Source of the DNA: Aplysia californica | Taxonomy: Eukaryota | DNA length: 64,000 bases | Reading direction: 5' to 3' | NCBI RefSeq assembly: GCF_000002075.1 | Contig: NW_004797283.1 | Location: 1,356,551 to 1,420,550 of the forward strand | Shown here: positions 1-63,987 of the stretch, one piece after another | Layout of the letters: the number at the start of each line of letters is the position of its first letter | Numbering within the stretch: the first letter of the stretch is position 1 | Position numbers and translations under genes: made by a program | Notes under the pieces: generated by a model | Database searches by the model: none | What the model was told of the DNA's origin: nothing | The model's input: only the letters and a program-made list of their open reading frames with translations

Positions 1-1432
1 AGGGGTTGGGCTTCTTTTCTTGAACGCTAGAAACTGAATGCGGGTGGTAGGAGGGTGCCACTGGCAGGTCCTACTTCTGTATTTTCCCTCCTCTGTTTCT
101 GTCCTGCTTTGTCCCATCCCTAAATAGCCATTATTGTTGTATCGATGTGCGTCTTTACTCAAACTCAAAGAAAAAGAAATGGAGTGTTGGTTCATGGCAA
201 AGCTAGCCTTTGAACAATATTTTCTGCCTTCCACCAAGGTTTGAATGGGACCTGGCTATTACTATTGCATTGGGATAAACCTGCCACAAGTTTGCTCCCT
301 GTTCAAGGGTTGATTTATTGTCTTAAGTTCTGGTTCAGGTGGTGGAGCTGTGAAGAGTTACTGTTGTAGTTTACAATGAGTAGCCCTGATTGGAGCAACA
401 TTTGAGTGGGGAGCAGATTGGAACAATAGTAACATGGGAACAGAAAGAGGTGTGGGTGGTTGGCTGATGCTCTGATGTGGTTTGCTCCTTCTTTCCTATC
501 AAACGTCTATCGTTCTTATCTCTCTTCCTTCTTTTTCATGTATGTTACTTTCTTGTAGCATTTCTAATCTTCGTCATTGATATGACCTTATTGCCTTGCA
601 AGTGCTGTAAAACTCTTTAACTAAAACTAAAAAAAAGAGAAAGAGAAGATCACTTGAGTGCTCTATGAACTGCAAGTCAAGTTATGGAAACTAGAATAGC
701 TGTGGCTTTAGGAGCTTTTGTATTTTTGTAAATCAGTGTCACAGAATGTGAATTTCTGTAGTTGTTGGAGGAACTTACAGTACTGAGATGAAAAAGACAT
801 ACAAAACAAAATACATACATACTTGAATTTGATTTTTTTGGGGTAGAATTTCCCTCGGTGATGTCTTTTTAGTTAAAAAAATTACCTTAAGTTTGTGAAA
901 AATATTTGTGCTAATGTCAACTTGGGACAATTTTTGGGGGGAATTGGCCAAAATGAGACAGAATTTCAGTGTGAGAAGCATGGTGTTGAAGTGGTCTTAT
1001 AATACATGTACTGGAAAAATACACAGAACAAAAAAGAAAACGATAAACAGTAATGAATGCTAATTTGTTCGTGTGATATGTGTACTCTCCGGGTTTTATT
1101 TGTATTTATGGGCCAGGGGTCCTTTCTTTTGAATAACCAAGTTAGTTTAATTTTAGGAGGTTTACTGCGCTCGCTACTGCATATATAAGCGCGCGAACCA
1201 CAAGTTGGTTGCATTCAAAACAGTTCACAGCACGACTTGGATTAGGTCAATGTTTATTTTAAAATGTAAAAAATTCATAGTGTTGAAAGGGACATTGAAC
1301 CTACAATGACCAATGAAGAAGCTGCTCGTGTTTTTGTATGCACATATGATTGTCAATGATCAGGATTGATTTGGTCATGTTGCTGTAGTGTTCTGAAAGG
1401 AAACAAACTGAAACTTTTGTTTTTGTTTGCAG

Positions 1433-2673
1433 GTCCAGTCCCAAACGTTTGCTCCAAGGGCCTGAAACACACATGGAATCCATTGTGTGTCATCGGCAGT
1501 GTGCAGAATGGAGACTTACAAGTCCGCAGAACAAGCAGCAAATCTGGACTACGACCCAAAACTGGCATCATGATGCTAAACTTAGGTGGTCCAGAGAAGC
1601 AGGAAGATGTTCATGATTTCCTTCTTCGTCTCTTCCTGGACAAAGATTTGATCCCACTTCCAGCCCAGAGTCAGTTAGCACCCCTAATTGCAAAAAGGAG
1701 AACACCACGTATCCAGGCTCAGTATGCAAAAATTGGCGGAGGTTCGCCCATCAAACGCTGGACGGAGCTGCAGGGCCAGGGCATGGTGGATATTCTGGAC
1801 AAGATAAGTCCAGAGTCTGCTCCACACAAGTTCTACGTGGGATTCCGCTATGCTGACCCCCTCACAGAAGACACCATTGAGCAGATGGCTGATGATGGAG
1901 TGCAACACGCTATAGCTTTCACTCAGTATCCACAATATAGCTGTTCTACTACGGGCAGTAGCCTCAATGCCATATACCGTTATTACAACAAGGGAGGACC
2001 CCCCGACAACATGACCTGGAGTGTGATTGATCGCTGGCCCACGCATCCCGGCTTAGTCCAGGCTTTTGTTGAGAATATCAAAGATGAGATCCTTCGTTTC
2101 CCCAAGGAAGACCAAGATGATGTTGTTATTTTGTTTTCGGCGCATTCTCTTCCACTGAAAGTTGTCAATAGGGGTGATCCGTACCCTACTGAAGTGGCTG
2201 CCACTGTCCAGCGGGTTATGGAAGGTCTGGGTCACTCTCATGCTTATCGCCTTGTGTGGCAATCGAAAGTGGGCCCTCTTCCCTGGCTCAGCCCTCAGAC
2301 AGATGAAGCAATCAAGGGTCTGGTTGACAGGGGAAGGAAGAACATTTTGTTGGTTCCCATTGCCTTCACGTCTGACCACATTGAAACCTTGTTCGAGTTG
2401 GATCTGGAGTACGCCGGGGAACTGGCAGCTGAAGTCGGGGTAAAAAATATTCGCAGAGCTGCGAGCCTCAACGACAACCCACTCTTCATTGACGCCCTTG
2501 CTGATATTGTAAAGAATCACATTGATTCTCAGGTTTCATGTTCTCCCCAGCTGTCCCTGCGGTGCCCAATGTGTGTCAATGTCACTTGTGGACAAGCTAA
2601 AGAGTTCTTCCGAAACCAACAGAGTCGGCTTGATGCTCTCACCGGCAACAAAATAGCGTCTGCGAAAGTGTAG
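1433..2673 (+). CDS. FECH: Ferrochelatase, mitochondrial; single large terminal coding exon (N-terminal exon(s) not identified, probably upstream of the window)
   Basis: ORF 1366..2673 has [66 protein letters not shown] and the animal C-terminal [2Fe-2S] motif CPMCVNVTC. Polypyrimidine tract and acceptor ttttgtttgcAG|G at 1431-1432 (phase 1), so 1366-1432 is intronic. Stop TAG at 2671-2673. Confidence 0.96.
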
Positions 2674-10697: not shown

Positions 10698-13600
10698 CTG
10701 GAAAAGATGAAGAAAACAGTAAGTTATAATATATTATAGGGTGACCTTATTTAGGCCACATATGGCCCAAATAAGCTAAACCCCCCTCCTTTACCTTATT
10801 TAGGCCACAGGTGGCCTAAATAAGCTAAACCCCCCTCCCTTACCTTATTTAGGCCACGCCTGTGGCCTAAATAAGCTAAACCCCCCTCCCTTACCTTATT
10901 TAGGCCACACCTTTATACAAAGTCACAGAAATATTCCTTTTGTGCTTATTGAGGTACAGTGCAGGGTGATTTTACCTGCAAGGGTAATTGGACAAAATGG
11001 GTAGAATCTTTATTGCTAATGGTCATATTTAGACAAATCCTATATCATTGTCTTTTTTTTTCTTAACTGCTCATGGTTATTAAAGAGTAAGCCAACTAGG
11101 TAGTAATTTCGGATTCCTAATACTAATATTATGGGCATTCTTAAAATTTTAAAACTTGTTTTTAGCGCTTTTCTCAACGTAAAACGGATTCCGTAAAAAA
11201 GCAATGACCATATCTTTCTTTTTCAAAGTATTGTGCATATTATATTTGTGTGAAACTATATATTCTATGCTTTCATGTACATGAAAAAAGCTAATAAAGG
11301 CAAGCAAAATGTTCTTCAGAGACACAGATCTAGTAGTAGGCCCACTGAATTTTTTTTATAAACCGGGAAAGATGACCTGAAGATAACAAAATTATTTTAT
11401 GATCTTCACTTGCACTTGCAACTTTTTGGATAAATTATAGTCTACCTCATTGTCTTTTTTTTCCATCATTTTTCTTCACTATTCATGACAACTGGCATGT
11501 ATTGTTTTCAGTTATTATCAAGAAAGTGGATAGGCGGACTACGGGGTCTATCTAGCCAAAAGGATAGGTGGACCCCGGGGTCTACCTAACAAAATGCTAG
11601 GATTTAGGATGTGAACCCCGGAGTGAGCGTAGTGAAATAAGTAGTAGATCTAGGTTTAACTAAGGATCGGTGGACCCCGGGGTCAACATAGTGAAATAAG
11701 TAGATCTCAGTTTATTTTATAGTAGGACTGGCGGAGCCCGTGGTCAATGTAGTGAAATTATAAGTAGATATAGGTTTAATTAAGGATTGGTGGACCCCGG
11801 GGTCAATGTAGTGAAATCAGTAGATCTAGGTTTAATTAAGGATTGGTGGACCCTGGGGTCAATGTAGTGAAATAAGTACATGTAGATCTAGGTTTAATTT
11901 TAAGGATTGGTGGACCCTGGAGTCAACGTAGTGAAATAGGTAGGTTTAAGGTGGACCCCAGGGTCTACCTAACGAAATGCTAGTTAGGTTTTTAGAATAG
12001 GTGGAACCTGCGGGGTCACCGTAGTAAAATAAGTAGGTTTAATCTAGGTGTCCCGGGGGTCCACCAATCCTTAATTAAACCTTATTCCTCTACGGCTATG
12101 GTGACTCCGGGGTCCACCAATCCTTTTAAAATTAACCCTACTTATTTCACTACGCTGACCCCGGGGTCCACCAATCTTTAAAGAAACATACTTATTTCAC
12201 TACGGTGACCCTGGGGTCCACCTGTCCTAAAACCTAGTATTTCGCTAGGTAGACCCCGGGGTCCACCTTAAACCTGCTTATTTATCACTACGTTGACCCC
12301 GGGGTCCACCAATCCTTACTTAAACCAAACCTTATTTCACTACGGTGACTCCGGGGTTTACATCCTAAAACCTAGTATTTCGCTTTGCAGACCCCGGAGT
12401 CCACCTATCCTCTTCAGGACTAAACTATTATCAATTTGCAATTTTCATTGATTAGCATATTTTTTTTAAAATATTGAATCAGAGATTCGCTTTCTAAAAA
12501 GTCCACTGCTAATGCTATTCTTTTCAAAGAAAATGGCACAATTTGATTTTATGACATGTTGTAAAAAAAGAGTTTTAAAAATATCCCGAAAANNNNNNNN
12601 NNNNNNNNNNNNNNNNNNNNNNNNNNNNNNNNNNNNNNNNNNNNNNNNNNNNNNNNNNNNNNNNNNNNNNNNNNNNNNNNNNNNNNNNNNNNNNNNNNNN
12701 NNNNNNNNNNNNNNNNNNNNNNNNNNNNNNNNNNNNNNNNNNNNNNNNNNNNNNNNNNNNNNNNNNNNNNNNNNNNNAGACTGAGCAGAGGCTTACAATG
12801 TAAATTCTCTGCTCTACAAGTAGAGAAAATCTTAAGTTTGCGCAAAACAGATTTTAGAAAAAAAGTTGGATCTAATTATTCTAATAAAAGTAAAAGTGAT
12901 TGTTATGCTGAGATTTGTTATTATTAACTCTGGAAATACAGTTACTTGCTGAATCTAAAAGTAACTAGAACTGTGCAATTCGTTTTATTTCAATTCCAAA
13001 GCCCAAAGGCATAGCAATAATAAGTTAGATCTAGATCTAGCAGTTGTAGGCTGCTTCTAGCATAGGCCTGCTACTACTGATTCTAGACAGGGAATCTAGA
13101 TCTTGCTATCGCCTGCACTATTTAAGTCAAATATATGGTAAAATAAAAACAAAACTGAATTTTTTGTCAGTCAGTACATCCCAATTGCCATAGCCGCACG
13201 TATTAATAGTTGAATAATGCGATACCGAAGCAACACGTTATCACAGTGTGCAGGGGAGAGCGAGGTGCTCGGTCGATTCGGTGGTTCGGCTTTTGTAGAT
13301 CTATGCATTTTTTACGGAAAGCCCTATTACCTGGCCTATTACTAGATCTATTAGTGTTGTGAAAACTTCAACCTCTACAGCTCAGGCGTCAAAAGATGCT
13401 GGAAAATAATAATGCGTCCTGAAGTTTCATAATTTATTTTTATACAGCATAACACAGTACACAGCCAGTAGTTTTTATTTCACCGAGTTATAAAAATGGC
13501 CTTCGTATAAAAATTGCCTTGTTTTCAGAAGCAAATTTTAATAGTTCTAGTTCTACCGAATCGATTTTCAGGCGAATTCAACCATTTTGATGATCTTTGT

Positions 13601-14980
13601 TTTCCTTTTAAAAAGATGTAGATCTAGGCCTGTCGGATGTGGCAGTGTGATTAACACTGAGTTGTTTAGATCTAGATCTAGACCCATCAAAACACGAGGC
13701 TTCGTGGCCGATCACAAAAGTCTACGGGGCTTATCGAGGCCGATTCGCCCTGCTGCGAGCACGTTCACTAAACTGCCTATAGATAGAATCTACTACCAAA
13801 TATTCTCTACACGATCTTTGCTACTACTACTACTAGGCCTACTAGCCTACATGTACTACTACGAGACAGTAAGAGAGAGTGTCACTCAGACAAAGATAGT
13901 GTAACTTTGACTCAGCCACGTAGTGTACACACTTTTTATACCCCAAATTTAACCCGGAAGTCCATTCGGAGGATTTGACCTTTTCACTTGACCAAAGTGT
14001 GCCAAAATGGTAGCCTAGCTTTTGCCCCTCCATGAAGGAAAAATCTGGCCCTCATTCAAACCATTGGGATTGAGCAAAATTTTGCGTATTGTGCTTTGTT
14101 CTTTACAATATTCATTATGGTTATGATTTATAAGTTGTACACTGAGACAAAACCGTACTAAATGAGAAAGGTGCACCATTATGAAAGTGGAATGAACTCA
14201 GTTGCCTGAAAAGGGTAGTTTGAGCATGTGTGGCCTATATAAGCTAAACCCCCCTCCCTTACCTTATTTAGGCCACAGTCCACTGTGGCCTGAATAAGCT
14301 AAACCCCCCTCCCTTACCTTATTTAGGCCACAGTCCACTGTGGCCTAAATAAGCTAAACCCCCCTCCCTTACCTTATTTAGGCCATATGTGGCCTAAATA
14401 AGCACTCCCTATATTATAAGTGCTGGCAAGAACAAAAAAACCTTTTTGTTAATCAGCTGCATGAGAATTTAACAGGGGAAAGCACCACCTTTTTTTCTAT
14501 CAACCAAATTAGTTTTGTGGTGGAAAGCACTCACCAAAGTCACCAAAAATTAATCAGTCTAAATGGCCATACAAATGCTAATGAAGAAGGTCGAGGATAG
14601 TCCTGTGCATACGAATGTGGTGTAGCCGTTAGGTGCTTCTTTGTCAAAGACAAGAGACTCGAGTTTGATTCCCGAGTGGGGAGAATTTCTATTGGGTGTC
14701 TCGTTCTGTCTGCTGGGATATTTTATACCTCGCAGCCCAGGCTGGCCCTGATAGGCAGGGACAGCAGCCTGCCTCCAAAATGATATAAATTGTGTCAATG
14801 GAGACGTAAAAACACCTATTAAAAAAATATATTTACATAATTGTACTGGATCTGAACATCTAAATTTATTATGATTATACTATACGGCCCCGGAACTTCA
14901 GAATTCCAAAATTTTTCCTGGAACTTCATGTTTTGGCCAGTCACTATGTATGGTCGGACATGACCTGGAGATGTTGCCCT

Positions 14981-15019
<39 letters not shown>

Positions 15020-18000
15020 GAAGGTTTTACGGCGCTCGCAACTGCATAAGGTCATTCGAGCGCCAAGGGGTGGGTGTCAACAGAGAAGTCTTTACAGGGA
15101 ATCAGACTTAGACTGCTCACCTCTCTAGCTTCAACAGCACAAGGTCTGCTTCGACTATCAGGGCACCCCCAAAAAATAGCAGGGAGTGACAAACATACAA
15201 AAGAAGTAGAGGAAAATGACAATAGTAAGGATCAGGAAAGAAAAAGCAGCAGTTCCCTGTTGTAGATCAGGCACAGTTATGAGCGTGACATGAGTCAGCC
15301 CATTTACAATTCTACTACGCTTGAACGAGATATGTCCCCCCTTTCGGAATGGCTTAAAGACACTTCAGTCAGTGGCATTGCCCCGGGTGGGTATGCCCCA
15401 TTCTAACAGAGACCTCATAAATACAATGGAAAAACTATACATGTTTATATAAATGTGGCAGCAAGAGGGTTCAGCAGTTCAATTAGAAAATGAGGTGTGT
15501 CTGAGCTCGTCAGTCAAACATACAACTACAACAACAAGAACAACAAAAACCATCAAGACTGAACAACAAAGACCAACAACCAGGCTGTAACAAATCAAAT
15601 GAAATGAAACACCTAGTGATTAATAATAATAAATAGCATTTGTTTAGCGCGTATCCCCGCTTACAGTAAGCTCTATGTGCTTTACACCATATTATTATCC
15701 CACAAGCCCATAGAACACTCCGAAACATTCTCAGCTTCCCGGAAAGCATACAGTGCAAAGCAGCTGTTTAAGTGCTCAAACCCTGGCAAGATCTTCCACC
15801 GTCTTTAGAAGGATACCCATTCCCATCTGGGTGAAGTGGGAAAAATGTATGTAAAGTGCCTTTCCCAAGGACACAACGTTGGGCCCCTGATGGAATTTGA
15901 ACCCACGACCTTACGGTTGCGAGTCTGAGAGCCTAACCACTAGACCACTGACGCCACATTACATTGGTGGTCAGCTAAAACAATCATTACAATTACATAA
16001 AGTCAAGTTCTCACAGTCACAAAAGTGAAAAGCCAAAGGAGATAAATGTAAAAGAATTTATATTGATAAAACAAGTTTAAACGAACCCCAAAAGCATGCA
16101 AAAGATAACAAACCTGACTGCTTGTTCAGTCAGGCTTACAAAAAACAATGAGTTCACCCAAAAATAAAAGATCAGTTCTGTTCTGAACATACAGTGCACG
16201 ATTTGACTGAAAACATCTTCCCAACACGTATAACACTAACACTCAAAAAAAATTGTGAATATCAAGGATCAGTTATTTCTTCAAAATCCAAAGGCCAGTA
16301 ATATCTCTCTCACTATCACAACTCAGTTTATCAACTGATCTGGATGAGCAGGCAGGGAAATTAGCATAGAATACAGTGCTTGCCTGGGTTTGATCCCGGT
16401 TTCTGCAAGTGCGGTCAAGAGATCTCGAAAGGACCAGGAAATAAAAAAAGTCATGCAATTGCATTAATTGCTTGGGAAATGTTTTTTCCAAAATTAGATG
16501 TGGATCGAAGAATAAGAGGGAACCTACTAAACTGCATGGTATAAATTTAAATCTATCGGAAAAAATCACATTATATACATACACAATGCTGCAGTCGTCA
16601 CAGAAGTCGTAAGATACATCAGCAGGACAGTCAATACAGTGCCATCGTATTCCAACTATAGGTTCACAGCCACAGTTGTCACACTGAAACAAAAACAAAT
16701 CACGGATGCAATAAAATGAAACAAATATTCAGAGATAAACGGAAACCATTGTATGAAGGTAAAATCATACCTGGTTAAAAAGTAATTCAAAACCAACATA
16801 CAAAAAATAATATATATATATCGCTAGCCGCTTGATTCAACCACTTAATTGCCAAGAGACAAATTTTTCAGGAGAAGCAAAAAACTTTTCTTTCTTTATG
16901 CTAGTACCTATGAATCTGAAATTCAGATATATGATATAATATGATGTAGGAGGATGGTCTGTACCTAACATTAAAAAAACAAAAGCTTTCTTTCTTAAGT
17001 TACTGAACATAGGCGGTTAAGACCTACCAAAATCTGTGTGATTCAACCACCTAAGTGACAGTATGACGGCGTCTTGGCGTTTGAATCACATTAATCAACG
17101 CCACTCGGCGAGTGTCAATGTTTGCTTGGGCGTTTGAGTAATCGATAAAAGCAAATCATAATAATTTTAAGAGCAATTGTAAAGTTAAGAATCATTATTT
17201 CAGTTATTTAGTTGGGTGTTCCGGGGCAGAACTGTTTTTGACCTAATGGAGTTGGTAAAAAAGACCATCTTAATGCTCAATTTGTACTGGATGTTTTTGT
17301 TCAGTGTGTATCAAAGGTAACGAACGTTTGTGACAACAGGGTCGTTTTAGTTTCAGCCGGGTCTGAATGGTCCAGAAATCTAACACCGGGGGGGGAGAGG
17401 AGGGGTGTATTGCTTTTTTAAAAAACATTCAAGATTATCCATGTGCACATAGACCATGCGTGGTGGAGTGGGGGACAACACAACTGGCGAGTTAGCCTAG
17501 AACATTTCCTCTCTGATTGCCAACGCCGAGCTGTCAACATCGCTTGCGCTAGAGAAAGAAATCTGATCCGATTTTCGATCAAGTATGACTTAGAGGTCAT
17601 GTTGAAACAATATCATCATCAGGGGAGATAACAAAAAGAAATAATCAGAACACCAAACCCACAATATTAACCCTTAAAACCCTATACCGCTGGTAACCGC
17701 TGACGCCCTATTTTCCTATACCGCTGGTAACCGCTGGTCGACTTTATCGTTTAATTCCCAGTGCTAGAAACAGGGGATGTAACTCCAGATGACTCTGTCG
17801 TGAGCAGAAAGTACCGATAATGTCATGAAGGCAGTTCTACACCGAAAGTTTGGAAATTTTGCGAGTTTTTAAGAAAATATAGTCATTTTTCACTGCCAGG
17901 TCCTCCAGGCCGCAAAATTTTTGACATTTTTTATCCTAACCAGACCCCAATAATGATCTCCCAGTCGGATATATCCATAAATATGACCGTTGAAGACGAT

Positions 18001-40977: not shown

Positions 40978-41829
40978 TATTACGCATTAAACCTGCAGAT
41001 TACCCCCTTAAAATTTAGGTGGTGCGTGGATGTTACTTATCAGCTGCACGCAGTTTCCGGTGACACCGGCTGGCTTCAGCAGAGAAGCCCCGCTCACATT
41101 CTGGTAGCTTGCATTTGCCGGTGTTGTTCCTTGAGTTTACCGCTGCCATGAGATTACCCCCGTCATTCTTTAACACTAGGGATCATGAATTGTCGGCCAT
41201 TTAAAAAAAATAAATTAATAATGATATCAAAATAACTTTAAAATTAATGGAAAGTCTTTCTCTACTTTCATAAAACTTGCTGGACTCTCATTCACCATAA
41301 AGTCACCATCCCCCTTACTTCCATGTCCCGTGAGCGTGGTTTTTCAACTCAGAATCTTGTTCGTACAGCACTCTGCAGTTCACTGACCACAAAGGCTGTA
41401 CATCAAACTGATCATTTGGCATGAAAGCAAGCATGAGACATTTTCATTTGATGAAAAGGAAGTGATCCAGGAGGCTTGAAAGTTTCACGATGGGAAAAAA
41501 ATGGAAAGACTGGAATGTGAACCCTGGGATAGCTCTGAAGAATAATGAATCAGTTTATTTTCTTTTTAAAAGTGTATTAGAGTTGGAATTGACTGCATTT
41601 TATTTCTCTCCTGGAACCCAACTTACCCTTCAAGTTAAATTTTAAGATTAATTGAAGTGACTTGTGGTTTCTTTAACAATATCTCTGTACTTGTAGCTTC
41701 TTTGCCTTAGTAAAAATTAAAGTTTGGGGTATTATATAAGTTTAAAGGGGGGGGGGTGATCCGTCCTTTCGTTTTAAAAAACTTGTGGCTTTTTCTCCTT
41801 TTCAGTTTCAGTGTGAACTGTCGACTGAT

Positions 41830-42486
41830 ATGGAAGGGCCAGGAGAAACAGTCACAGAAGAGACTGTGTCTGTGGAAGAGGAATCCCCTGAATCTGTAGA
41901 TGGAGATGGAAATGATGCACAATTGTCTCTAGATCCCAGTGCTAAAAACAGGTCAAAGAGAAAGCCATCAAAAACGCAAATCAAGCATATTGCCCCAAAG
42001 GATGAGAACTGTGACACTTCAAAGTACGGTACTCAAAATATGGAGGACCTGTTCAATGATGTAACGCAGGGTATTTATCCGGGAACAGGGTCAGATCTTT
42101 CAAACCAGGCTGTTTTGCCAGCGGGGATAAATCCTCAGCAACTGCCGACACCTGTGCAAGGTCCCATCCCTGGTGCCGGTGCCCCTCCTGCAACCCCAAC
42201 AACCCCGAGGAGACCCAGGCGGTCCTCGCAAATTTCTGGTGCTTCCCCTGGATCAGGCCGTTCGGTGTCCTCCAGGCCTCCTCCCAGTTACCCGTGTGGC
42301 ATATGTGGGAAGATATTCCGTGTCCCAAGTCGATACGACAGCCACATGCTAGGTCATAGTAAAGGCAAGCCATTTTGTTGCAACACGTGCGGAAAGATGT
42401 TTGCCTCCCAGCACAAGCTGGATCTGCACTTGCCTGTCCACAGCTGTGACCGCAGTGCTTCTTTCACTTGTGAAAGCTGTGGCAAG
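41830..42486 (+). CDS. C2H2 ZNF coding exon 1
   Basis: MEGPGETVTEE...YPCGICGKIFRVPSRYDSHMLGH...FTCESCGK; donor GTAAGA at 42487. Confidence 0.88.
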
Positions 42487-45400
42487 GTAAGATTTGCCTT
42501 TTTTTATTCTAAATAAATGTTTTTATGACTATTGTTACATCTGGTATTCGTCCTTTACGCGATAGTTCGATCATTCACTGTTTTTCTCATAACTTACGAA
42601 ATTGTTCTTAAAGATCGTTTTGCTTCTTTCTTTGGGTTTAAAAAAGCAATTTCAATCGAAGTTTAAAAGTTAAAATATATTTTTATTTTGTTTTCCTTCC
42701 CTTGTGGCAGTGGATAGTGGAGGGGATGTCCATTTTTCTTTCTCAAACATCTTTATCAATACTGGTTTGGGAGATTTAAAAAATTATAGTTTTTTTTTTT
42801 TTTTAAATTTAAGGTGTGCTTTACTTTAAATATAATTTTAATCTATTGCAGACTAATTTGATCAATTGGAAATTGACTTACTGTGGAACAATACATCTTA
42901 CAGCACATTCTCTGCCCATTAAAAAAAAATGATTTTCTTCCTGATTCTTTGTGTGTGTGCTTAATTTTGCCTTAGCATTTGAAGTGTTCTGAGATGACCA
43001 GTGGGCGGTGTGGCAAATTGAACAGGTATGAATGGTCACAAGGATAGACGGATAGATTTGATGGCAATAAAATAGTTGTTTTTACAAAGGAATTGTTGCT
43101 TTGTAAAATGGGATTGGAAGATAACATTTGTTCGGGTTCTGGTCTGGGAGATTGGCTATTGACCCTGGTTGTGTCAGAATTGAACTTTCTTCAGATGACT
43201 AGTTATTTGATCACTCTTTGATTGTCGATAAAAAGAAAAGCACCCCATTTTTCAAATGATTTATTTTATTTTCATTATTGCCGTTCAATGAAGTCTCTAT
43301 AGTTACCTTGTTTCTGTTCTGGTTTCACATGTTTTCTTAATGTTCTTAGGTGTGTGTCAACTGGCGTGCATACCTTTACCATTTGAAAGCAAAACATACT
43401 GAATCTGGAGGGAAAAAATTTGCTTGCAATGTAAGTAGATCCAATACCAATGGAGGGAAAAGATTTTCTTGCAATGTAAGTAATTGTTTGCTTTTATTTC
43501 TTTCCTTTTGTTTGGTTTTGTACTTTATTTACTATTTTAGTTTGCTCTTAAAAATATGTATTTAAGGCAACAGACAAAATGCGCAGACATATCTTTTTTA
43601 CAGTGAAGGATATTCATTCATTGAGACAGAATTTAATTTGTTTGTCTCTCTTGCTAGGTTTTGAAAGATCAGTCTCACATGTTACTTGTTGAACGTTACG
43701 ATTTCCAACAAATATTACAATGAGCTTGTGTTTTGTTAATTTTTGTTATGTTTTTAACAAAATTGGTACTGGGACTCTCAACCTTTTATAATTCAGTACT
43801 CATTTCTGAATAACTTCTTTTCTGCTCACCTTGTTCATTTCCCTTATAGATAGGGGAAGAATAAATTTAGTATTATATTATATATAGAATGGTGGTGTGA
43901 TTTTAGTCATTCTGCTTCTGCTTAACGGTCAAGTGGGCCGCAGCATTCTGGTTGAGAGACCCTGTCTGATAATTTTGCATCTAATGATCTAGTTTTAAAA
44001 ATCAGTTCACTAGCATTTGGTCATGGATGTAATTTTTGTCCATGACAACCTTTTAAGATAGCTGTGTTATTGAAGATTCTATTTCAAAGGTCATAAAGCT
44101 ATTTTTCTGCTTGTAAAGCTTGTATTTATTTAAACTAATGAGAGACAATTTTTCCACTTGTATTTGTTGTTATTCATTTTATGAAGTTGCATTGTTGACT
44201 GTATTATTGTTGCTGTTGTTGTTACTGTAAAATCCTCATTGACATGCTCAAAGATGCATCATCTCATTTTGCGCATGCATCACCTTCACTCATTCGAAGC
44301 CATTTTCTAGAATTCAGCCTTTCATTTCCGTACATTACTTTTGTAGTGTTAGAATCCAAGAAACTCTTCGCCTCTAAATTGTATAATTTTGGTTGAATTA
44401 GAATAAACTTACGGCTGGTGTGCAGCGAATCATAGGTCATTTGTTAATTTTAAAAGGAGGACTTGTTTCGTTTGCCAGACCATCTGATTGTTCTGAGAAA
44501 TGAGGCATTTTAGAAATGGGTGCAAAAAAATCAGGTCCATATGGGTTCAAACTTTTTTCTTCCGTGCCATTGACCAAGTTAGTAAGCAATTGTAGCACCA
44601 TTACTGGCTGTCTTCGTGGCCCATGGCAGATTTGACAGGCTTTTTTCGTGGGTTTTGGAGGTTTTTTTCTGCTATGCCAAGTGGACAATTGCTGCCTGCT
44701 GATTTCCCATTCATAGTACTTCATATTATGCTATCAACACCATTGATCCCGACCATACGCTTAGTTTTCATGCTGCTTTTGTGCACAGAATTTGATTTTG
44801 CTGTCATCTTCATGGTTAGTCCTGGCAAATGTAGATTTTTTTATTTTGTTAAAGACACAAGTCTGCAGATGGATGAACTCAAGTATGCCTTGCTTTTAAT
44901 ATTGCGGGTACTTCAAAATATATTTTAGTGGCTCTTGACTACGAAATTAACTGTTAGAGACATGTACATGTACCATTTTACCCCTGTCCTTGGAAATGTA
45001 CAGCAGTCAGTAAGAATATGCTTCAACAGTTGATGAACTGATGAACAGAAGCTGAAGTTATTAAGTGAGCAAATGAAAACAACATAAGTTTCCCAGAAGA
45101 AAGGGGATATGGTGTTATTCTTGACAATAGTGTTCAAAAGCTTGAACGATTTTTTTAAAAATGTGGGCTTTTTTAAGTTGCAGTTATTTCTCTCAAAGGA
45201 ACACAAATGTGTTGAGTCATCATAGTACTTTTCACAACTCCACCTATCCCTTATTTTAAATACCACAGCCAGTTAATCTTTGGTCTGTGTTGGTTTTAGG
45301 GTTGTTTTTTATTTTCAGTAAAAACTTGCATTCCCCTTGTTGCAAAGACGTTCATGGAGTTTCTGTGATGTAGAAATGAAAATAATGTGTTTAATTTTCA

Positions 45401-48172
45401 AATTGATTTTTAGAACTATTTTATTTATTTTTTAGATATGGTATCAGGGATTCCTCTATGGCTTTGGCTAACTTAATTTGAAAGTAAATTGTTGATGAGA
45501 GGCAACTTGATGTAAATGTCGTTCTTAAGTTTAACTTAAAAACCAGGAGACCAGGGTATTGAATGAGTGGTAATTTTTAATGGTGAAATGAGATGTATTT
45601 GCCTTCTTAATTAAGATGATTGAAATTTGAAATAATTTTTCAAGAAGTATTTGATATTCTCTGTCTCTTTGGCATCTAATAATAAAGATAAAAGTTGGTT
45701 TTTGAATTGAGCACTAAATTTGGATTTTACAGTAAAATGATGTGTTCTTTCTGCATATTTTTTTTTTTCTTTCACAAATTATATTGTGCTATTGTTTTGC
45801 TCTTTCAGCTTTGTGGTCGTCAGTTTCACACGGGCCAGAGACTCAGGAACCACATGGCAAGCCATGAAGTTGGCAAGAACCATTGTTGTCAGACCTGTGG
45901 TAAACTGTTTGAGAGCAAGAAGAAACTGGACACTCACATGCTGGTGCATAACCTGACCAGCAAGCACGACCAGCATCTCCAGTGCTCAGACTGTGGCAAG
46001 GAGTATACTGAGTGGATTGCCTTCAAACAGCATATGAAAACACATGGCGCAGAAGGCGTTCAGTATCCCTGTGGTCTGTGTGAAATGGTGTTTCCTACTC
46101 AATACGAGAAAGAAAAACACAAGAGAGTGCATAAGCAAGTTCAGTGTGAGTTCTGTGAAAGGTATTTCCGTTCGGCTTCGGTCTTGTCGGTTCACCTAAG
46201 GGTTCACACTGGGGAACGTCCGTATAAATGCGGACTCTGTGAGCGAGATTTTTCTCAGTCTTCTGTTCTCAAAGTCCACATGCGCACTCACCGAAAAGAG
46301 GGCAAGTATGAATGCAAAAGGTGCGGGAATGTGTACTTGGACGTTATGGAATTTTTCAAACATCACATGGGTCATCTAGAAGAGGGCAATCTTCAGTGTG
46401 AGGAGTGTGGAAAAGTGTTTGAGACAATCAATAACAAGAATCGCCATATGGCTGCACATAGGGACAGGGCTGGTCGTGTGTGTCAGGTATGTGGCAAAGA
46501 GTTTGGCAGAGTCTCTCACCTGGAGGCTCATATGCTGTGTCACTCTGACCAGCTACCTCTCTTGTGTAAAGTGTGTGGGAAAATGTTTCCATCTCAGGAA
46601 GTCCTGACTGCCCACTATGCCACACACATGTCTGCTGGGGAGAGCGTCTCCAATTCTGGCCTGCCTGCTTCCAAGGGTCCTCTCTTCTGTGGCCTCTGCG
46701 GCAAAATGTTCAAAGGACAGGTGTACCTGAACAATCACATGAAAAAGCATGAAAGAGAAGGCCTCAACGCTCGTGGTGGGGATGAAATTCCAGATGAAGA
46801 TCTGGTAGAAGTTGAGGGGGGTGAGTTTTCTTGCCTGGACTGTGGAAAAACATTTTCCAAAGAGCATCATCTGGCAGTTCACAAACGTGAGCATACAGGA
46901 GAGCGACCGCACACATGCATTTTGTGTGGTCAAAGCTTTATGTTGAGGAAAGAACTTCTGGATCACATTGGTGAGCACAAGCGCAATGGACTCATGATGT
47001 ACATGGGGAATCAAGGTGGTGCAACTGTAGCTGCAAACGCTGCTGCTGCCCCCACATCGGCTACTCAAAAGGTTGGCAATAACACAAAGACTCCCAATGC
47101 AACCTTTCATGAGAGTGATAGTGGCTCTGAAACAGAAACAGACAATGAAGAGTCCGAGGCAACAAAGGCTGCTGCTGCTGCTGCAACAGTACAAAATAAT
47201 AAGCAACGGTCTTCTCCAGCAGTAGTACCACAGCAAGCTATCACTCCATATAGAGAGAATGATTACCCACCTCCTCAGACCAATCAATATCCAGAAAAGA
47301 ACTATGTTATACCAGCAAAAAGTCAGTATGAAGAAAAACTGTACCCAAATGTTCGCAATGTTTTGTATGATGAAAAGAACTACCCTAGAAATATAAGTGC
47401 ACAGTACCTTGACAAGGACTATAATATTGATAGTCAGAACAATTATCAGGAGAAAAGTTTTTCTCGGAGCAGCCACGTGCCAGTTGTTGAAAAATCTTTT
47501 CCAAGCAATCACAGTACTGCGTACGTGGAGAAAGGATACTTGAACCCTCCCCCGCCGACATCTATCTCTGAGAAGAGGTACATAGAGAGTCCTGGCAGCT
47601 CTTACTCTGAGAAAGCTTATGTTGAAGCTCAAAAGCTCGCTTATGCCGAGGAGAGTCAAAGTCTATCCAGAAAGAATCACTCTCCGGTATCGATGAACGA
47701 AAGTCAAGTGTTACACTACAATATACCAAGGGGTTCCTATAATTCTCCCATTTCACCTCCATCTAGTCACATGCCATCCTCCAGTGGCAGCAGTAGTCAT
47801 TTACATGCAGGTTTACAGACTGAACCTTATGGAAGGCCAGACATACAAATTCCTTTAAATGACCGCATGCAACCAGCCATGCAGCTGTCGATGAAAGATA
47901 CCAGTGTCCATCCAAACATTCACATGATCCGACCAGAGCCTCATTTACCACCTAGTGTTCACCATGATTACAAAAATGATATGAGCCCATATGCTTTCCC
48001 ATACAATAAGGCATATATGCCCACAGCAATAAGCAATCTTCCTCACCGTAGCACTTTTCACACTGGCTTCCCAAGCACGCACGGCAGATTCACTACAGAT
48101 TCTCAGCTATCTGTAGCCAATTTCCAGCTTCTACCCCAAACTGCATTTCCTGAGAATTCCCATCAGACTTGA
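41830..48172 (+). CDS. Multi-C2H2 (Kruppel-type) zinc-finger protein; 16 fingers, 3 coding exons (41830-42486, 43350-43430 or -43475, 45809-48172)
   Basis: Fingers 3 and 4 are each split by a phase-0 GT-AG intron (CESCGK|VCVNWRAYLYHLKAKH; FACN|LCGRQFHTGQRLRNHMASH). TGERP linkers, acidic/Pro-rich N-terminus and low-complexity C-terminus. ATG at 41830 follows acceptor(s) at 41804-41805/41810-41811; an upstream coding exon cannot be excluded. Confidence 0.9.
43350..43430 (+). CDS. C2H2 ZNF coding exon 2 (alternative donor at 43476)
   Basis: ttcttag|GTG TGT GTC AAC...TTT GCT TGC AAT|gtaagt; completes finger 3 and starts finger 4. Confidence 0.87.
45809..48172 (+). CDS. C2H2 ZNF terminal coding exon
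   Basis: tctttcag|CTT TGT GGT; rest of finger 4 plus 12 further fingers, Ala/Ser/Tyr-rich tail, stop TGA. Confidence 0.92.
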   Translation, partial: LCGRQFHTGQRLRNHMASHEVGKNHCCQTCGKLFESKKKLDTHMLVHNLTSKHDQHLQCSDCGKEYTEWIAFKQHMKTHGAEGVQYPCGLCEMVFPTQYEKEKHKRVHKQVQCEFCERYFRSASVLSVHLRVHTGERPYKCGLCERDFSQSSVLKVHMRTHRKEGKYECKRCGNVYLDVMEFFKHHMGHLEEGNLQCEECGKVFETINNKNRHMAAHRDRAGRVCQVCGKEFGRVSHLEAHMLCHSDQLPLLCKVCGKMFPSQEVLTAHYATHMSAGESVSNSGLPASKGPLFCGLCGKMFKGQVYLNNHMKKHEREGLNARGGDEIPDEDLVEVEGGEFSCLDCGKTFSKEHHLAVHKREHTGERPHTCILCGQSFMLRKELLDHIGEHKRNGLMMYMGNQGGATVAANAAAAPTSATQKVGNNTKTPNATFHESDSGSETETDNEESEATKAAAAAATVQNNKQRSSPAVVPQQAITPYRENDYPPPQTNQYPEKNYVIPAKSQYEEKLYPNVRNVLYDEKNYPRNISAQYLDKDYNIDSQNNYQEKSFSRSSHVPVVEKSFPSNHSTAYVEKGYLNPPPPTSISEKRYIESPGSSYSEKAYVEAQKLAYAEESQSLSRKNHSPVSMNESQVLHYNIPRGSYNSPISPPSSHMPSSSGSSSHLHAGLQTEPYGRPDIQIPLNDRMQPAMQLSMKDTSVHPNIHMIRPEPHLPPSVHHDYKNDMSPYAFPYNKAYMPTAISNLPHRSTFHTGFPSTHGRFTTDSQLSVANFQLLPQTAFPENSHQT

Positions 48173-63500: not shown

Positions 63501-63639
63501 CAAGAAACCTACCATATGATGTGGCCTAAATAAGATAAGGGAGGGGGTTTAGCTTATTTGGGCCTCAGTGTGGCCTAAATAAGGTAAGGGAGGGGGGTTT
63601 AGCTTATTTAGGCCCAGTGTGACCTAAATAAGGTCACCC
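60533..63639 (-). mobile_element. Second, inverted copy of the 10739-14409 element (left end intact, right end not found)
   Basis: 60533-63165 is colinear with the reverse complement of ~10908-13690, including the palindromic array at 61692-62538; terminal array 63520-63639 ends GGTCACCC. Confidence 0.88.
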
Positions 63640-63987
63640 TAATATAATTTTGTTATTTTCTGGTCACCTTTCCAAGGACCTTAAATTGATTCTACATCAC
63701 ATGTCATGTACGATACGGCTGTGAAGGAAAATGGATGTGAAGAGTTTTAAAGAAATAATAATGTAACTTGTAAAGAAAACAATGCTTTACATTGGTTTAG
63801 TTATTTTGACTACATATGTGGCCTAAATATGGTAAGGGAGGGGGGTTTAGCTTATTTAGGCCACAGATGTGGCCTAAATAAGGTAAAGGAGGGGGGTTTA
63901 GCTTATTTAGGCCACCTGTGGCCCAAATAAGGTAAGGGAGGGGGGTTTAGCTTATTTAGGCCATATGTGGCCTAAATAAGGTCACCC
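63640..63987 (-). mobile_element. Left end of a third copy of the same family, abutting or interrupted by copy 2
   Basis: Array 63817-63987 ends GGTCACCC; 63640-63673 resembles internal sequence 62661-62694 and 11367-11400. Confidence 0.8.

What the first reader, a model, noticed from the sequence alone, without database searches (positions are those of the whole stretch)
10739..14409. Transposon whose ends are direct arrays of a recombination-site-like cassette
Seen: both ends (10739-10910, 14227-14409) are tandem copies of GTGGCCTAAATAAG-CTAAACCCCCCTCCCTTAC-CTTATTTAGGCCAC, i.e. 14-bp inverted arms around a polar 19-bp core. All six cores point the same way, including at the right end, so the termini are simultaneously direct and inverted repeats. 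Arms and cores are nearly invariant while the short linkers differ (ATA, AG, GCCT, AGTCCACT x2, TAT). The 3.3-kb body sits in the linker position between cassettes 3 and 4. Outer ends are GGG/CCC with a perfect 9-bp TSD. Known: 9-bp TSDs, G..C termini and subterminal tandem repeats typify Mutator/Foldback-type elements, but their arrays are normally mirror images. Inference: the ends may have been built from one cassette array, and recombination between direct cassettes could excise or swap the body, leaving ~350-bp empty or solo-array forms. The loxP/FRT-like geometry is an analogy only.
Basis: partly seen in the sequence, partly recalled or inferred. Interest (0 to 1): 0.85.

Follow-up and report, generated by a model that had tools for sequence, protein, structure and literature searches.

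The report
Transposon with direct-repeat cassette ends
This is a recently active, non-coding cut-and-paste transposon family (about 500 copies, most like Mutator foldback elements) whose two ends are direct copies of one self-complementary repeat array, so the ends can recombine with each other and shed the middle, leaving tiny body-less elements that also spread.

Summary
The family has about 500 copies, a strict AT-rich 9-bp TSD and an empty allele in another sample, so it moved recently by ordinary cut-and-paste. The loxP/recombinase idea is not supported: the body is one invariant non-coding sequence with deletion subfamilies (no cargo swapping), no end-to-end junctions exist, and the spacer (19, or 11 bp) is too long. 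Because each cassette is an inverted pair, the arms of the two ends are in-register mirror images; only the 11-bp centre is polar. A transposase would see a normal foldback terminus like Tm1 or Muta1 (Mutator); Merlin is not excluded, since no transposase was linked. Some minis may be assembly collapses. I found no description of this architecture, but Repbase/Dfam could not be checked. The scan had noted only the internal palindrome before. New variant of a known kind; interest 0.45.

The parts
10730..10738 (.). left copy of the 9-bp target site duplication
10739..10759 (+). left terminus: 7-bp motif GGGTGAC plus first 14-bp arm
   Evidence: 515 genome matches at up to 1 mismatch
10762..10908 (+). 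left array: three cassettes (arm, polar core, inverted arm), linkers AG and GCCT
10909..14229 (+). non-coding body shared by the family (3.5-3.7 kb subfamily)
   Evidence: 538 genome candidates for its right 347 bp, six 100% identical
11532..12414 (.). internal foldback: two opposed arrays of a 45-60 bp unit; part of the family body, lost in the 0.87-kb and mini forms
   Evidence: (z = -32)
12593..12777 (.). assembly gap (N), left unfilled; flanks collinear in other family members
14230..14386 (+). right array: three cassettes, cores in the same direction as at the left end, linker AGTCCACT
14389..14409 (+). right terminus: last 14-bp arm plus 7-bp motif CACTCCC
   Evidence: 563 genome matches at up to 1 mismatch
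14410..14418 (.). right copy of the 9-bp target site duplication
60533..63987 (-). second family member in the window: two left ends (at 63987 and 63639), body of the 3.8-kb subfamily, right end missing

Best explanation
A non-autonomous cut-and-paste DNA transposon family, most likely moved in trans by a Mutator (Phantom/Tm1-type) DDE transposase. Shown: about 500 copies, a 9-bp duplication made on insertion, recent movement, a non-coding invariant body, and direct arrays at both ends. Inferred: the transposase cuts at the 7-bp G-rich termini and binds the 14-18 bp arms. Since the arms alternate in direction, the array of binding sites reads the same from either end; a direct copy of an end array therefore works as an inverted repeat, and the direction of the 11-bp spacer is largely invisible to the enzyme. 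The direct repeats are then worked on by ordinary homologous processes (unequal exchange, annealing during repair of the gap left by excision). These change the cassette number, copy variants from one end to the other and delete the body, leaving solo arrays much as LTR elements leave solo LTRs. Solo arrays keep both termini and at least one lineage has spread as a MITE.
For: 36 end pairs with an exact 9-bp duplication, 1 with 8 bp; 33 distinct TSDs, 90% AT. A contig from another sample joins the flanks of copy L032 and skips 3644 bp = element plus one TSD. Six copies are 100% identical over 347 bp. Left end against reverse-complemented right end aligns in register at 70% identity with mismatches concentrated in the 11-bp centres and the linkers. 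Cassette number varies, left 1-4 and right 0-3 in 33 copies. The 3.8-kb subfamily has the same two-base arm variant and the same ACT linker at both ends, with 73-83 bp exact left-right identity against about 48 elsewhere; the AG linker and the A8G variant occur at the left end in some subfamilies and the right end in others. 27 exact-ended minis plus 2 with a variant first arm, in several linker lineages. Of 18 copies with a collapsed first palindrome at least 13 starts are minis, some sharing derived core changes. Tm1 has asymmetric 7-bp outer motifs, 14-bp repeats of variable number, a purine-rich motif and 9-bp TSDs (PMC3169594). Muta1 has a GGG terminal motif and 12-bp repeats that differ only in their linkers, and one repeat per end suffices (PMC5499845). 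The genome holds MULE transposases (37 hits).
Against: No transposase was found between these ends in any fetched locus, and none of the listed ends brackets a MULE hit; only the first 100 ends of each list could be compared. Merlin-type transposases are also present (70 hits) and make GG ends with 8-9 bp TSDs. One mini (C84) is duplicated on both sides of a 2.9-kb gap, which fits either a full/mini heterozygote or an assembly collapse; three more such close pairs were not checked. The cores are identical across subfamilies whose bodies differ by 2-9%, a little more than a neutral spacer would suggest. Some shared variants could be recurrent mutation.
Confidence: 0.62

Rival explanations
1. 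Same anatomy and recombination, but the mobilising enzyme is a Merlin (IS1595-family) transposase.
For: Merlin elements have 5'-GG termini, 8-9 bp TSDs, sometimes very imperfect TIRs and internal tandem repeats (PMC8101967); 70 PF12762 hits in this genome.
Against: The strict 9-bp TSD, asymmetric 7-bp outer motifs and arrays of 14-bp arms match Tm1/Muta1 more closely; IS1595-family TSDs are usually 8 bp; no listed end brackets a Merlin hit.
Confidence: 0.2
2. The polar core is itself functional (second DNA-binding site, host G-rich-box factor, or G-quadruplex/hairpin structure on one strand), and the direct orientation is kept by selection.
For: Cores have one consensus across five subfamilies. 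Only 1 flipped core was seen among hundreds of ends, while a flipped linker palindrome occurs at three places.
Against: Left-right exchange also homogenises cores. My rough count (about 1 fixed change where about 5 are expected) is weak. Two copies with no right cassette have perfect TSDs (L003, L065), though they may have lost it after insertion.
Confidence: 0.12
3. A site-specific (tyrosine) recombinase acts on loxP-like cassettes to excise or swap the body.
For: Arm-spacer-arm geometry in direct orientation; body-less products exist; 17 PF00589 hits in the genome.
Against: Such sites have 11-13 bp arms and 6-8 bp spacers, and Cryptons have no TIRs (PMC3212892); here the spacer is 19 or 11 bp. 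No cargo diversity. No end-to-end junctions. Two 94-bp minis imply different crossover points, one inside an arm. The 9-bp duplication is made at insertion.
Confidence: 0.04
4. The element is real but the body-less forms are mostly assembly collapses of the two direct arrays.
For: C84 mini and 490 bp of flank are duplicated exactly across a gap, offset 3577 bp, close to a full element minus a mini; close pairs also at C137, C315 and C560.
Against: 84-94 bp minis sit in gap-free sequence with their own TSDs while exact left-right identity is mostly under 50 bp; the collapsed-palindrome lineage is mainly minis that share derived changes.
Confidence: 0.1

Closest known systems
Tm1 of root-knot nematodes (Mutator/Foldback, Phantom subclass; PMC3169594)
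   Same: 9-bp TSD; different 7-bp motifs at the two outer ends; about 14-bp motif in variable copy number; purine-rich motif between units; non-coding kilobase members and MITE-like members.
   Different: Tm1 arrays are head-to-tail units mirrored at the two ends; here units alternate in direction and the two ends are direct copies. Tm1 has a known transposase copy; none is linked here.
Muta1 of Aedes aegypti (type 2 foldback MULE; PMC5499845)
   Same: GGG-starting terminal motif; short subterminal repeats with variable linkers; unequal repeat numbers at the two ends of non-autonomous copies; 8-9 bp TSD.
   Different: Muta1 TIRs are 97% identical mirror images with single-direction repeats; no direct array and no solo-array products are described in that paper.
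Merlin / IS1595 family (PMC8101967)
   Same: GG termini, 8-9 bp TSD, imperfect TIRs, internal tandem repeats.
   Different: Usually 8-bp TSD in the IS1595 family; arrays of paired arms at both ends are not described there.
Crypton and loxP/FRT-type tyrosine-recombinase sites (PMC3212892)
   Same: Inverted arms around a polar spacer, repeated in direct orientation.
   Different: Spacer too long, TIR-like termini and a 9-bp TSD present, no recombinase linked, no junction products.
Solo-LTR formation in LTR retrotransposons (established knowledge)
   Same: Direct terminal repeats recombine and delete the body, leaving one hybrid repeat between the original TSDs.
   Different: Here a DNA transposon; the solo keeps both cleavable termini and can move again.

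Membership tests
Mutator (MULE), type 2 foldback | 8-11 bp TSD, typically 9 bp | tested here: met
   36 of 37 exact duplications are 9 bp; empty allele in another sample
Mutator (MULE), type 2 foldback | long TIR built of a terminal motif and short subterminal repeats of variable number | tested here: met
   120-180 bp in-register mirror at 70% identity, arms matching; variable number
Mutator (MULE), type 2 foldback | the two TIRs are mirror images over their whole length | tested here: not met
   11-bp centres are direct: 403 direct and 0 mirrored right ends
Mutator (MULE), type 2 foldback | MULE DDE transposase between the same ends in an autonomous copy | tested here: inconclusive
   none in 70 loci; 37 MULE hits in the genome could not be cut out
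Merlin | 5'-GG termini and 8-9 bp TSD | tested here: met
   criteria from PMC8101967
Merlin | DDE_Tnp_IS1595 transposase between the same ends | tested here: inconclusive
   70 hits in the genome, none bracketed by the listed ends; lists cover only the first 100 ends
Tyrosine-recombinase site / Crypton | 11-13 bp arms around a 6-8 bp spacer | tested here: not met
   14+19+14 or 18+11+18 bp
Tyrosine-recombinase site / Crypton | no TIRs; 4-6 bp terminal direct repeats | tested here: not met
   TIR-like termini and variable 9-bp TSD
Tyrosine-recombinase site / Crypton | circular excision intermediate | tested here: inconclusive
   no right-left junction in the assembly; extrachromosomal circles cannot be seen in it
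Already catalogued family (Repbase/Dfam) | match to a deposited consensus | not testable with these tools
   libraries not available; the 12-bp arm core occurs in one unrelated paper only

The most novel reading that the evidence does not exclude
The direct orientation is functional: the polar core is read by the transposase or a host factor, and the element has a second, programmed reaction in which the arrays recombine to release the body and leave a transposable solo array.
Probability: 0.08. Interest if true: 0.85.

Novelty: new variant of a known kind. Interest (0 to 1): 0.45.

Why it matters
It shows that a TIR transposon can have ends that are direct copies of each other when its binding module is self-complementary. 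That gives a DNA transposon LTR-like behaviour (solo formation, concerted evolution of the two ends) and a built-in route from a 3.5-kb element to 90-150 bp MITEs, one of the long-discussed origins of MITEs, here with parents, products and marker variants in one genome. It also matters for annotation: TIR finders score such ends as 70% imperfect, and assemblers may collapse them. It does not reveal a new enzyme or recombination system on present evidence.

Tried and rejected
Different cargos: rejected, every body is the same family; extra sequence in long copies is nested MITEs or a LINE. Mirror right ends: 0. Right-left junctions within 30 bp: 0. Sister families with other termini or a symmetric core: only point and slippage variants found. 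Core as a fossil end-to-end junction: considered (arm + 7 + x + 7 + arm gives 19 for x = 5) but each side matches the termini at only 3 of 7 positions. Internal foldback as an independent nested element: 57 of 61 listed clusters lie within about 4.5 kb of a listed family end (counted by hand), so it travels with this family. Structured RNA: only generic hairpin hits far below gathering scores. The Phantom paper was not held; one paper search timed out, two found nothing. Two patterns over the size limit were shortened and re-sent. The tree includes misaligned rows (L034, L036, L065, L069) and was used only for the subfamily distances. The bisulfite run was uninformative.

Full report
Observation. 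The structure is as described. The element spans 10739-14409 between two copies of a 9-bp sequence. Each end has three cassettes of arm, 19-bp core and inverted arm, and each terminus adds one half arm and a 7-bp motif, GGGTGAC on the left and CACTCCC on the right. All six cores point the same way. The arm matches 27 times in the window against 0.52 expected. The gap at 12593-12777 was left unread. In gap-free family members its two flanks are collinear and about 100-255 bp apart, and both ends share one TSD, so the two sides very probably belong to one insertion. No frame is involved, as the body has no credible ORF.

Family. The genome is 927 Mb in 4332 pieces; from memory these figures are those of the Aplysia californica reference, which no tool confirmed. 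It holds 1290 cassettes, 515 left and 563 right termini and 538 candidates for the right part of the body. In the copies fetched, 36 end pairs have an exact 9-bp duplication and one an 8-bp one; the 33 distinct TSDs are 90% AT. The family is young: six copies are identical over 347 bp, and copies lie about 1% from their subfamily consensus. A contig from a different sample joins the flanks of copy L032 with a single target copy, skipping 3644 bp, which is the element plus one TSD. This shows that the duplication is tied to the insertion and that the site is polymorphic. A run from a second organism holds related sequence at 90-99% identity.

Body. All bodies are one non-coding sequence with deletion subfamilies of about 3.8, 3.5-3.7, 3.05, 2.4 and 0.87 kb, 2-9% apart in substitutions. 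Longer copies carry nested MITEs or a LINE; no fetched locus has a transposase ORF inside the ends. A 0.9-kb internal foldback (11532-12414) is part of this body: nearly all listed matches to its unit lie next to family ends. It is absent from the 0.87-kb and mini forms, so it is probably not needed in cis. There is no sign of cargo swapping.

Orientation. Direct cores are the rule: 403 right ends with the direct core and none mirrored, one mirrored left end. But the ends are also inverted repeats in the sense that matters to a transposase. The left end aligns in register with the reverse complement of the right end at 70% identity; the arms match, including a symmetric TAA at the core edges, and the mismatches fall mainly in the 11-bp centres and linkers. 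Because arms alternate in direction, the array of arms is the same from either side.

Recombination between the ends. Cassette number varies, 1-4 on the left and 0-3 on the right. In the 3.8-kb subfamily both ends carry the same ACT linker and the same two-base arm variant; the AG linker and the A8G variant are at the left end in some subfamilies and the right end in others. This is best read as exchange between the ends, although some variants may have recurred. Body-less forms exist: 7 with one cassette, 17 with two and 3 with three have exact ends, 2 more have a flipped first palindrome. The 94-bp and 144-bp forms that were fetched have 9-bp TSDs, except L029. The 144-bp form is what an in-register crossover in the 3.8-kb subfamily gives; two 94-bp forms imply different crossover points, one inside an arm. 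One lineage with a collapsed first palindrome has 18 copies, at least 13 of them minis, some sharing derived core changes; it has spread on its own. Caution: the C84 mini is duplicated with its flanks on both sides of a 2.9-kb gap, offset 3577 bp. That fits a full/mini heterozygote or an assembly collapse, and three other close pairs could not be examined. No right-left junction exists in the assembly.

Mechanism. Shown: cut-and-paste-type insertion with a 9-bp duplication, recent mobility, invariant non-coding body, direct arrays, body-less forms. Inferred: a DDE transposase supplied in trans cuts at the 7-bp termini and binds the arms; a direct copy of one end array is tolerated because the module is self-complementary; host homologous repair, probably often at the gap left by excision, varies the arrays, homogenises them and deletes the body. 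How the direct arrangement first arose is not shown; copying of one end over the other, as seen in the 3.8-kb subfamily, is sufficient.

Comparison. The closest described elements are Mutator foldbacks. Tm1 has different 7-bp motifs at its two outer ends, about 14-bp repeats in variable number, a purine-rich motif and 9-bp TSDs, with a Phantom-like transposase (PMC3169594). Muta1 has a GGG terminal motif, 12-bp repeats whose linkers carry all left-right differences, and needs only one repeat per end (PMC5499845). Both have mirrored arrays, which is the one feature that differs here. Merlin also has GG ends and 8-9 bp TSDs (PMC8101967). The genome has both transposase types and neither could be tied to these ends, so the element works like a Mutator foldback but membership is unproven. 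Tyrosine-recombinase sites have 6-8 bp spacers and Cryptons lack TIRs (PMC3212892); those criteria fail.

Limits. Repbase and Dfam were not available, so the family may already be catalogued without the architecture being remarked on. Paper searches found no description. The scan's earlier notes cover only the internal palindrome of this stretch.

Verdict. Real and family-wide; an unusual end architecture on an otherwise ordinary non-autonomous 9-bp-TSD transposon. New variant of a known kind, interest 0.45. The most novel reading left open, a functional polar core with programmed body release, has about 8% probability.

Noticed in passing
window 60533-63987 (minus); L047: Copy with two left ends 348 bp apart (outer end from the 2.4/3.05-kb type, inner element of the 3.8-kb type). 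The same chimera at C12 (L047) is complete with a TSD at the outer left end, so it moved as a unit; the window copy has lost its right end.
   Followed up: partly
window 11532-12414: Internal foldback of about 50-bp units with a GACCCCGGGGTC palindrome; some units contain GGGGTCTACC, close to the Muta1 terminal motif. Probably coincidence; function unknown.
   Followed up: partly
G000:C145:225427-225470: The only left end whose first core is inverted; it shares a flipped first palindrome with two minis on C137, showing local inversion between arms.
   Followed up: partly
L053 (G000:C84:1474080-1477800); also C137, C315, C560: Pairs of minis 1.9-3.6 kb apart on one strand; at C84 an exact 634-bp duplicate across a gap. 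Candidates for full/mini heterozygotes or assembly collapse.
   Followed up: partly
L054 (G000:C81:1369197-1370475): Four left ends in tandem at 403-452 bp spacing next to a gap; tandem amplification or assembly artefact.
   Followed up: no
L059: A LINE-like element (reverse transcriptase and RNase H-like pieces) follows the first right cassette, apparently inserted in the right array.
   Followed up: no
window 1366-2673 (+): A complete ferrochelatase (PF00762, E 1.8e-107) in one uninterrupted ORF of 435 aa; intronless, possibly a retrocopy.
   Followed up: no
window 16273-16698 (-) and 41785-48172 (+): Neighbouring host genes: an exon with a ZZ zinc finger and a multi-C2H2 zinc-finger gene.
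   Followed up: no
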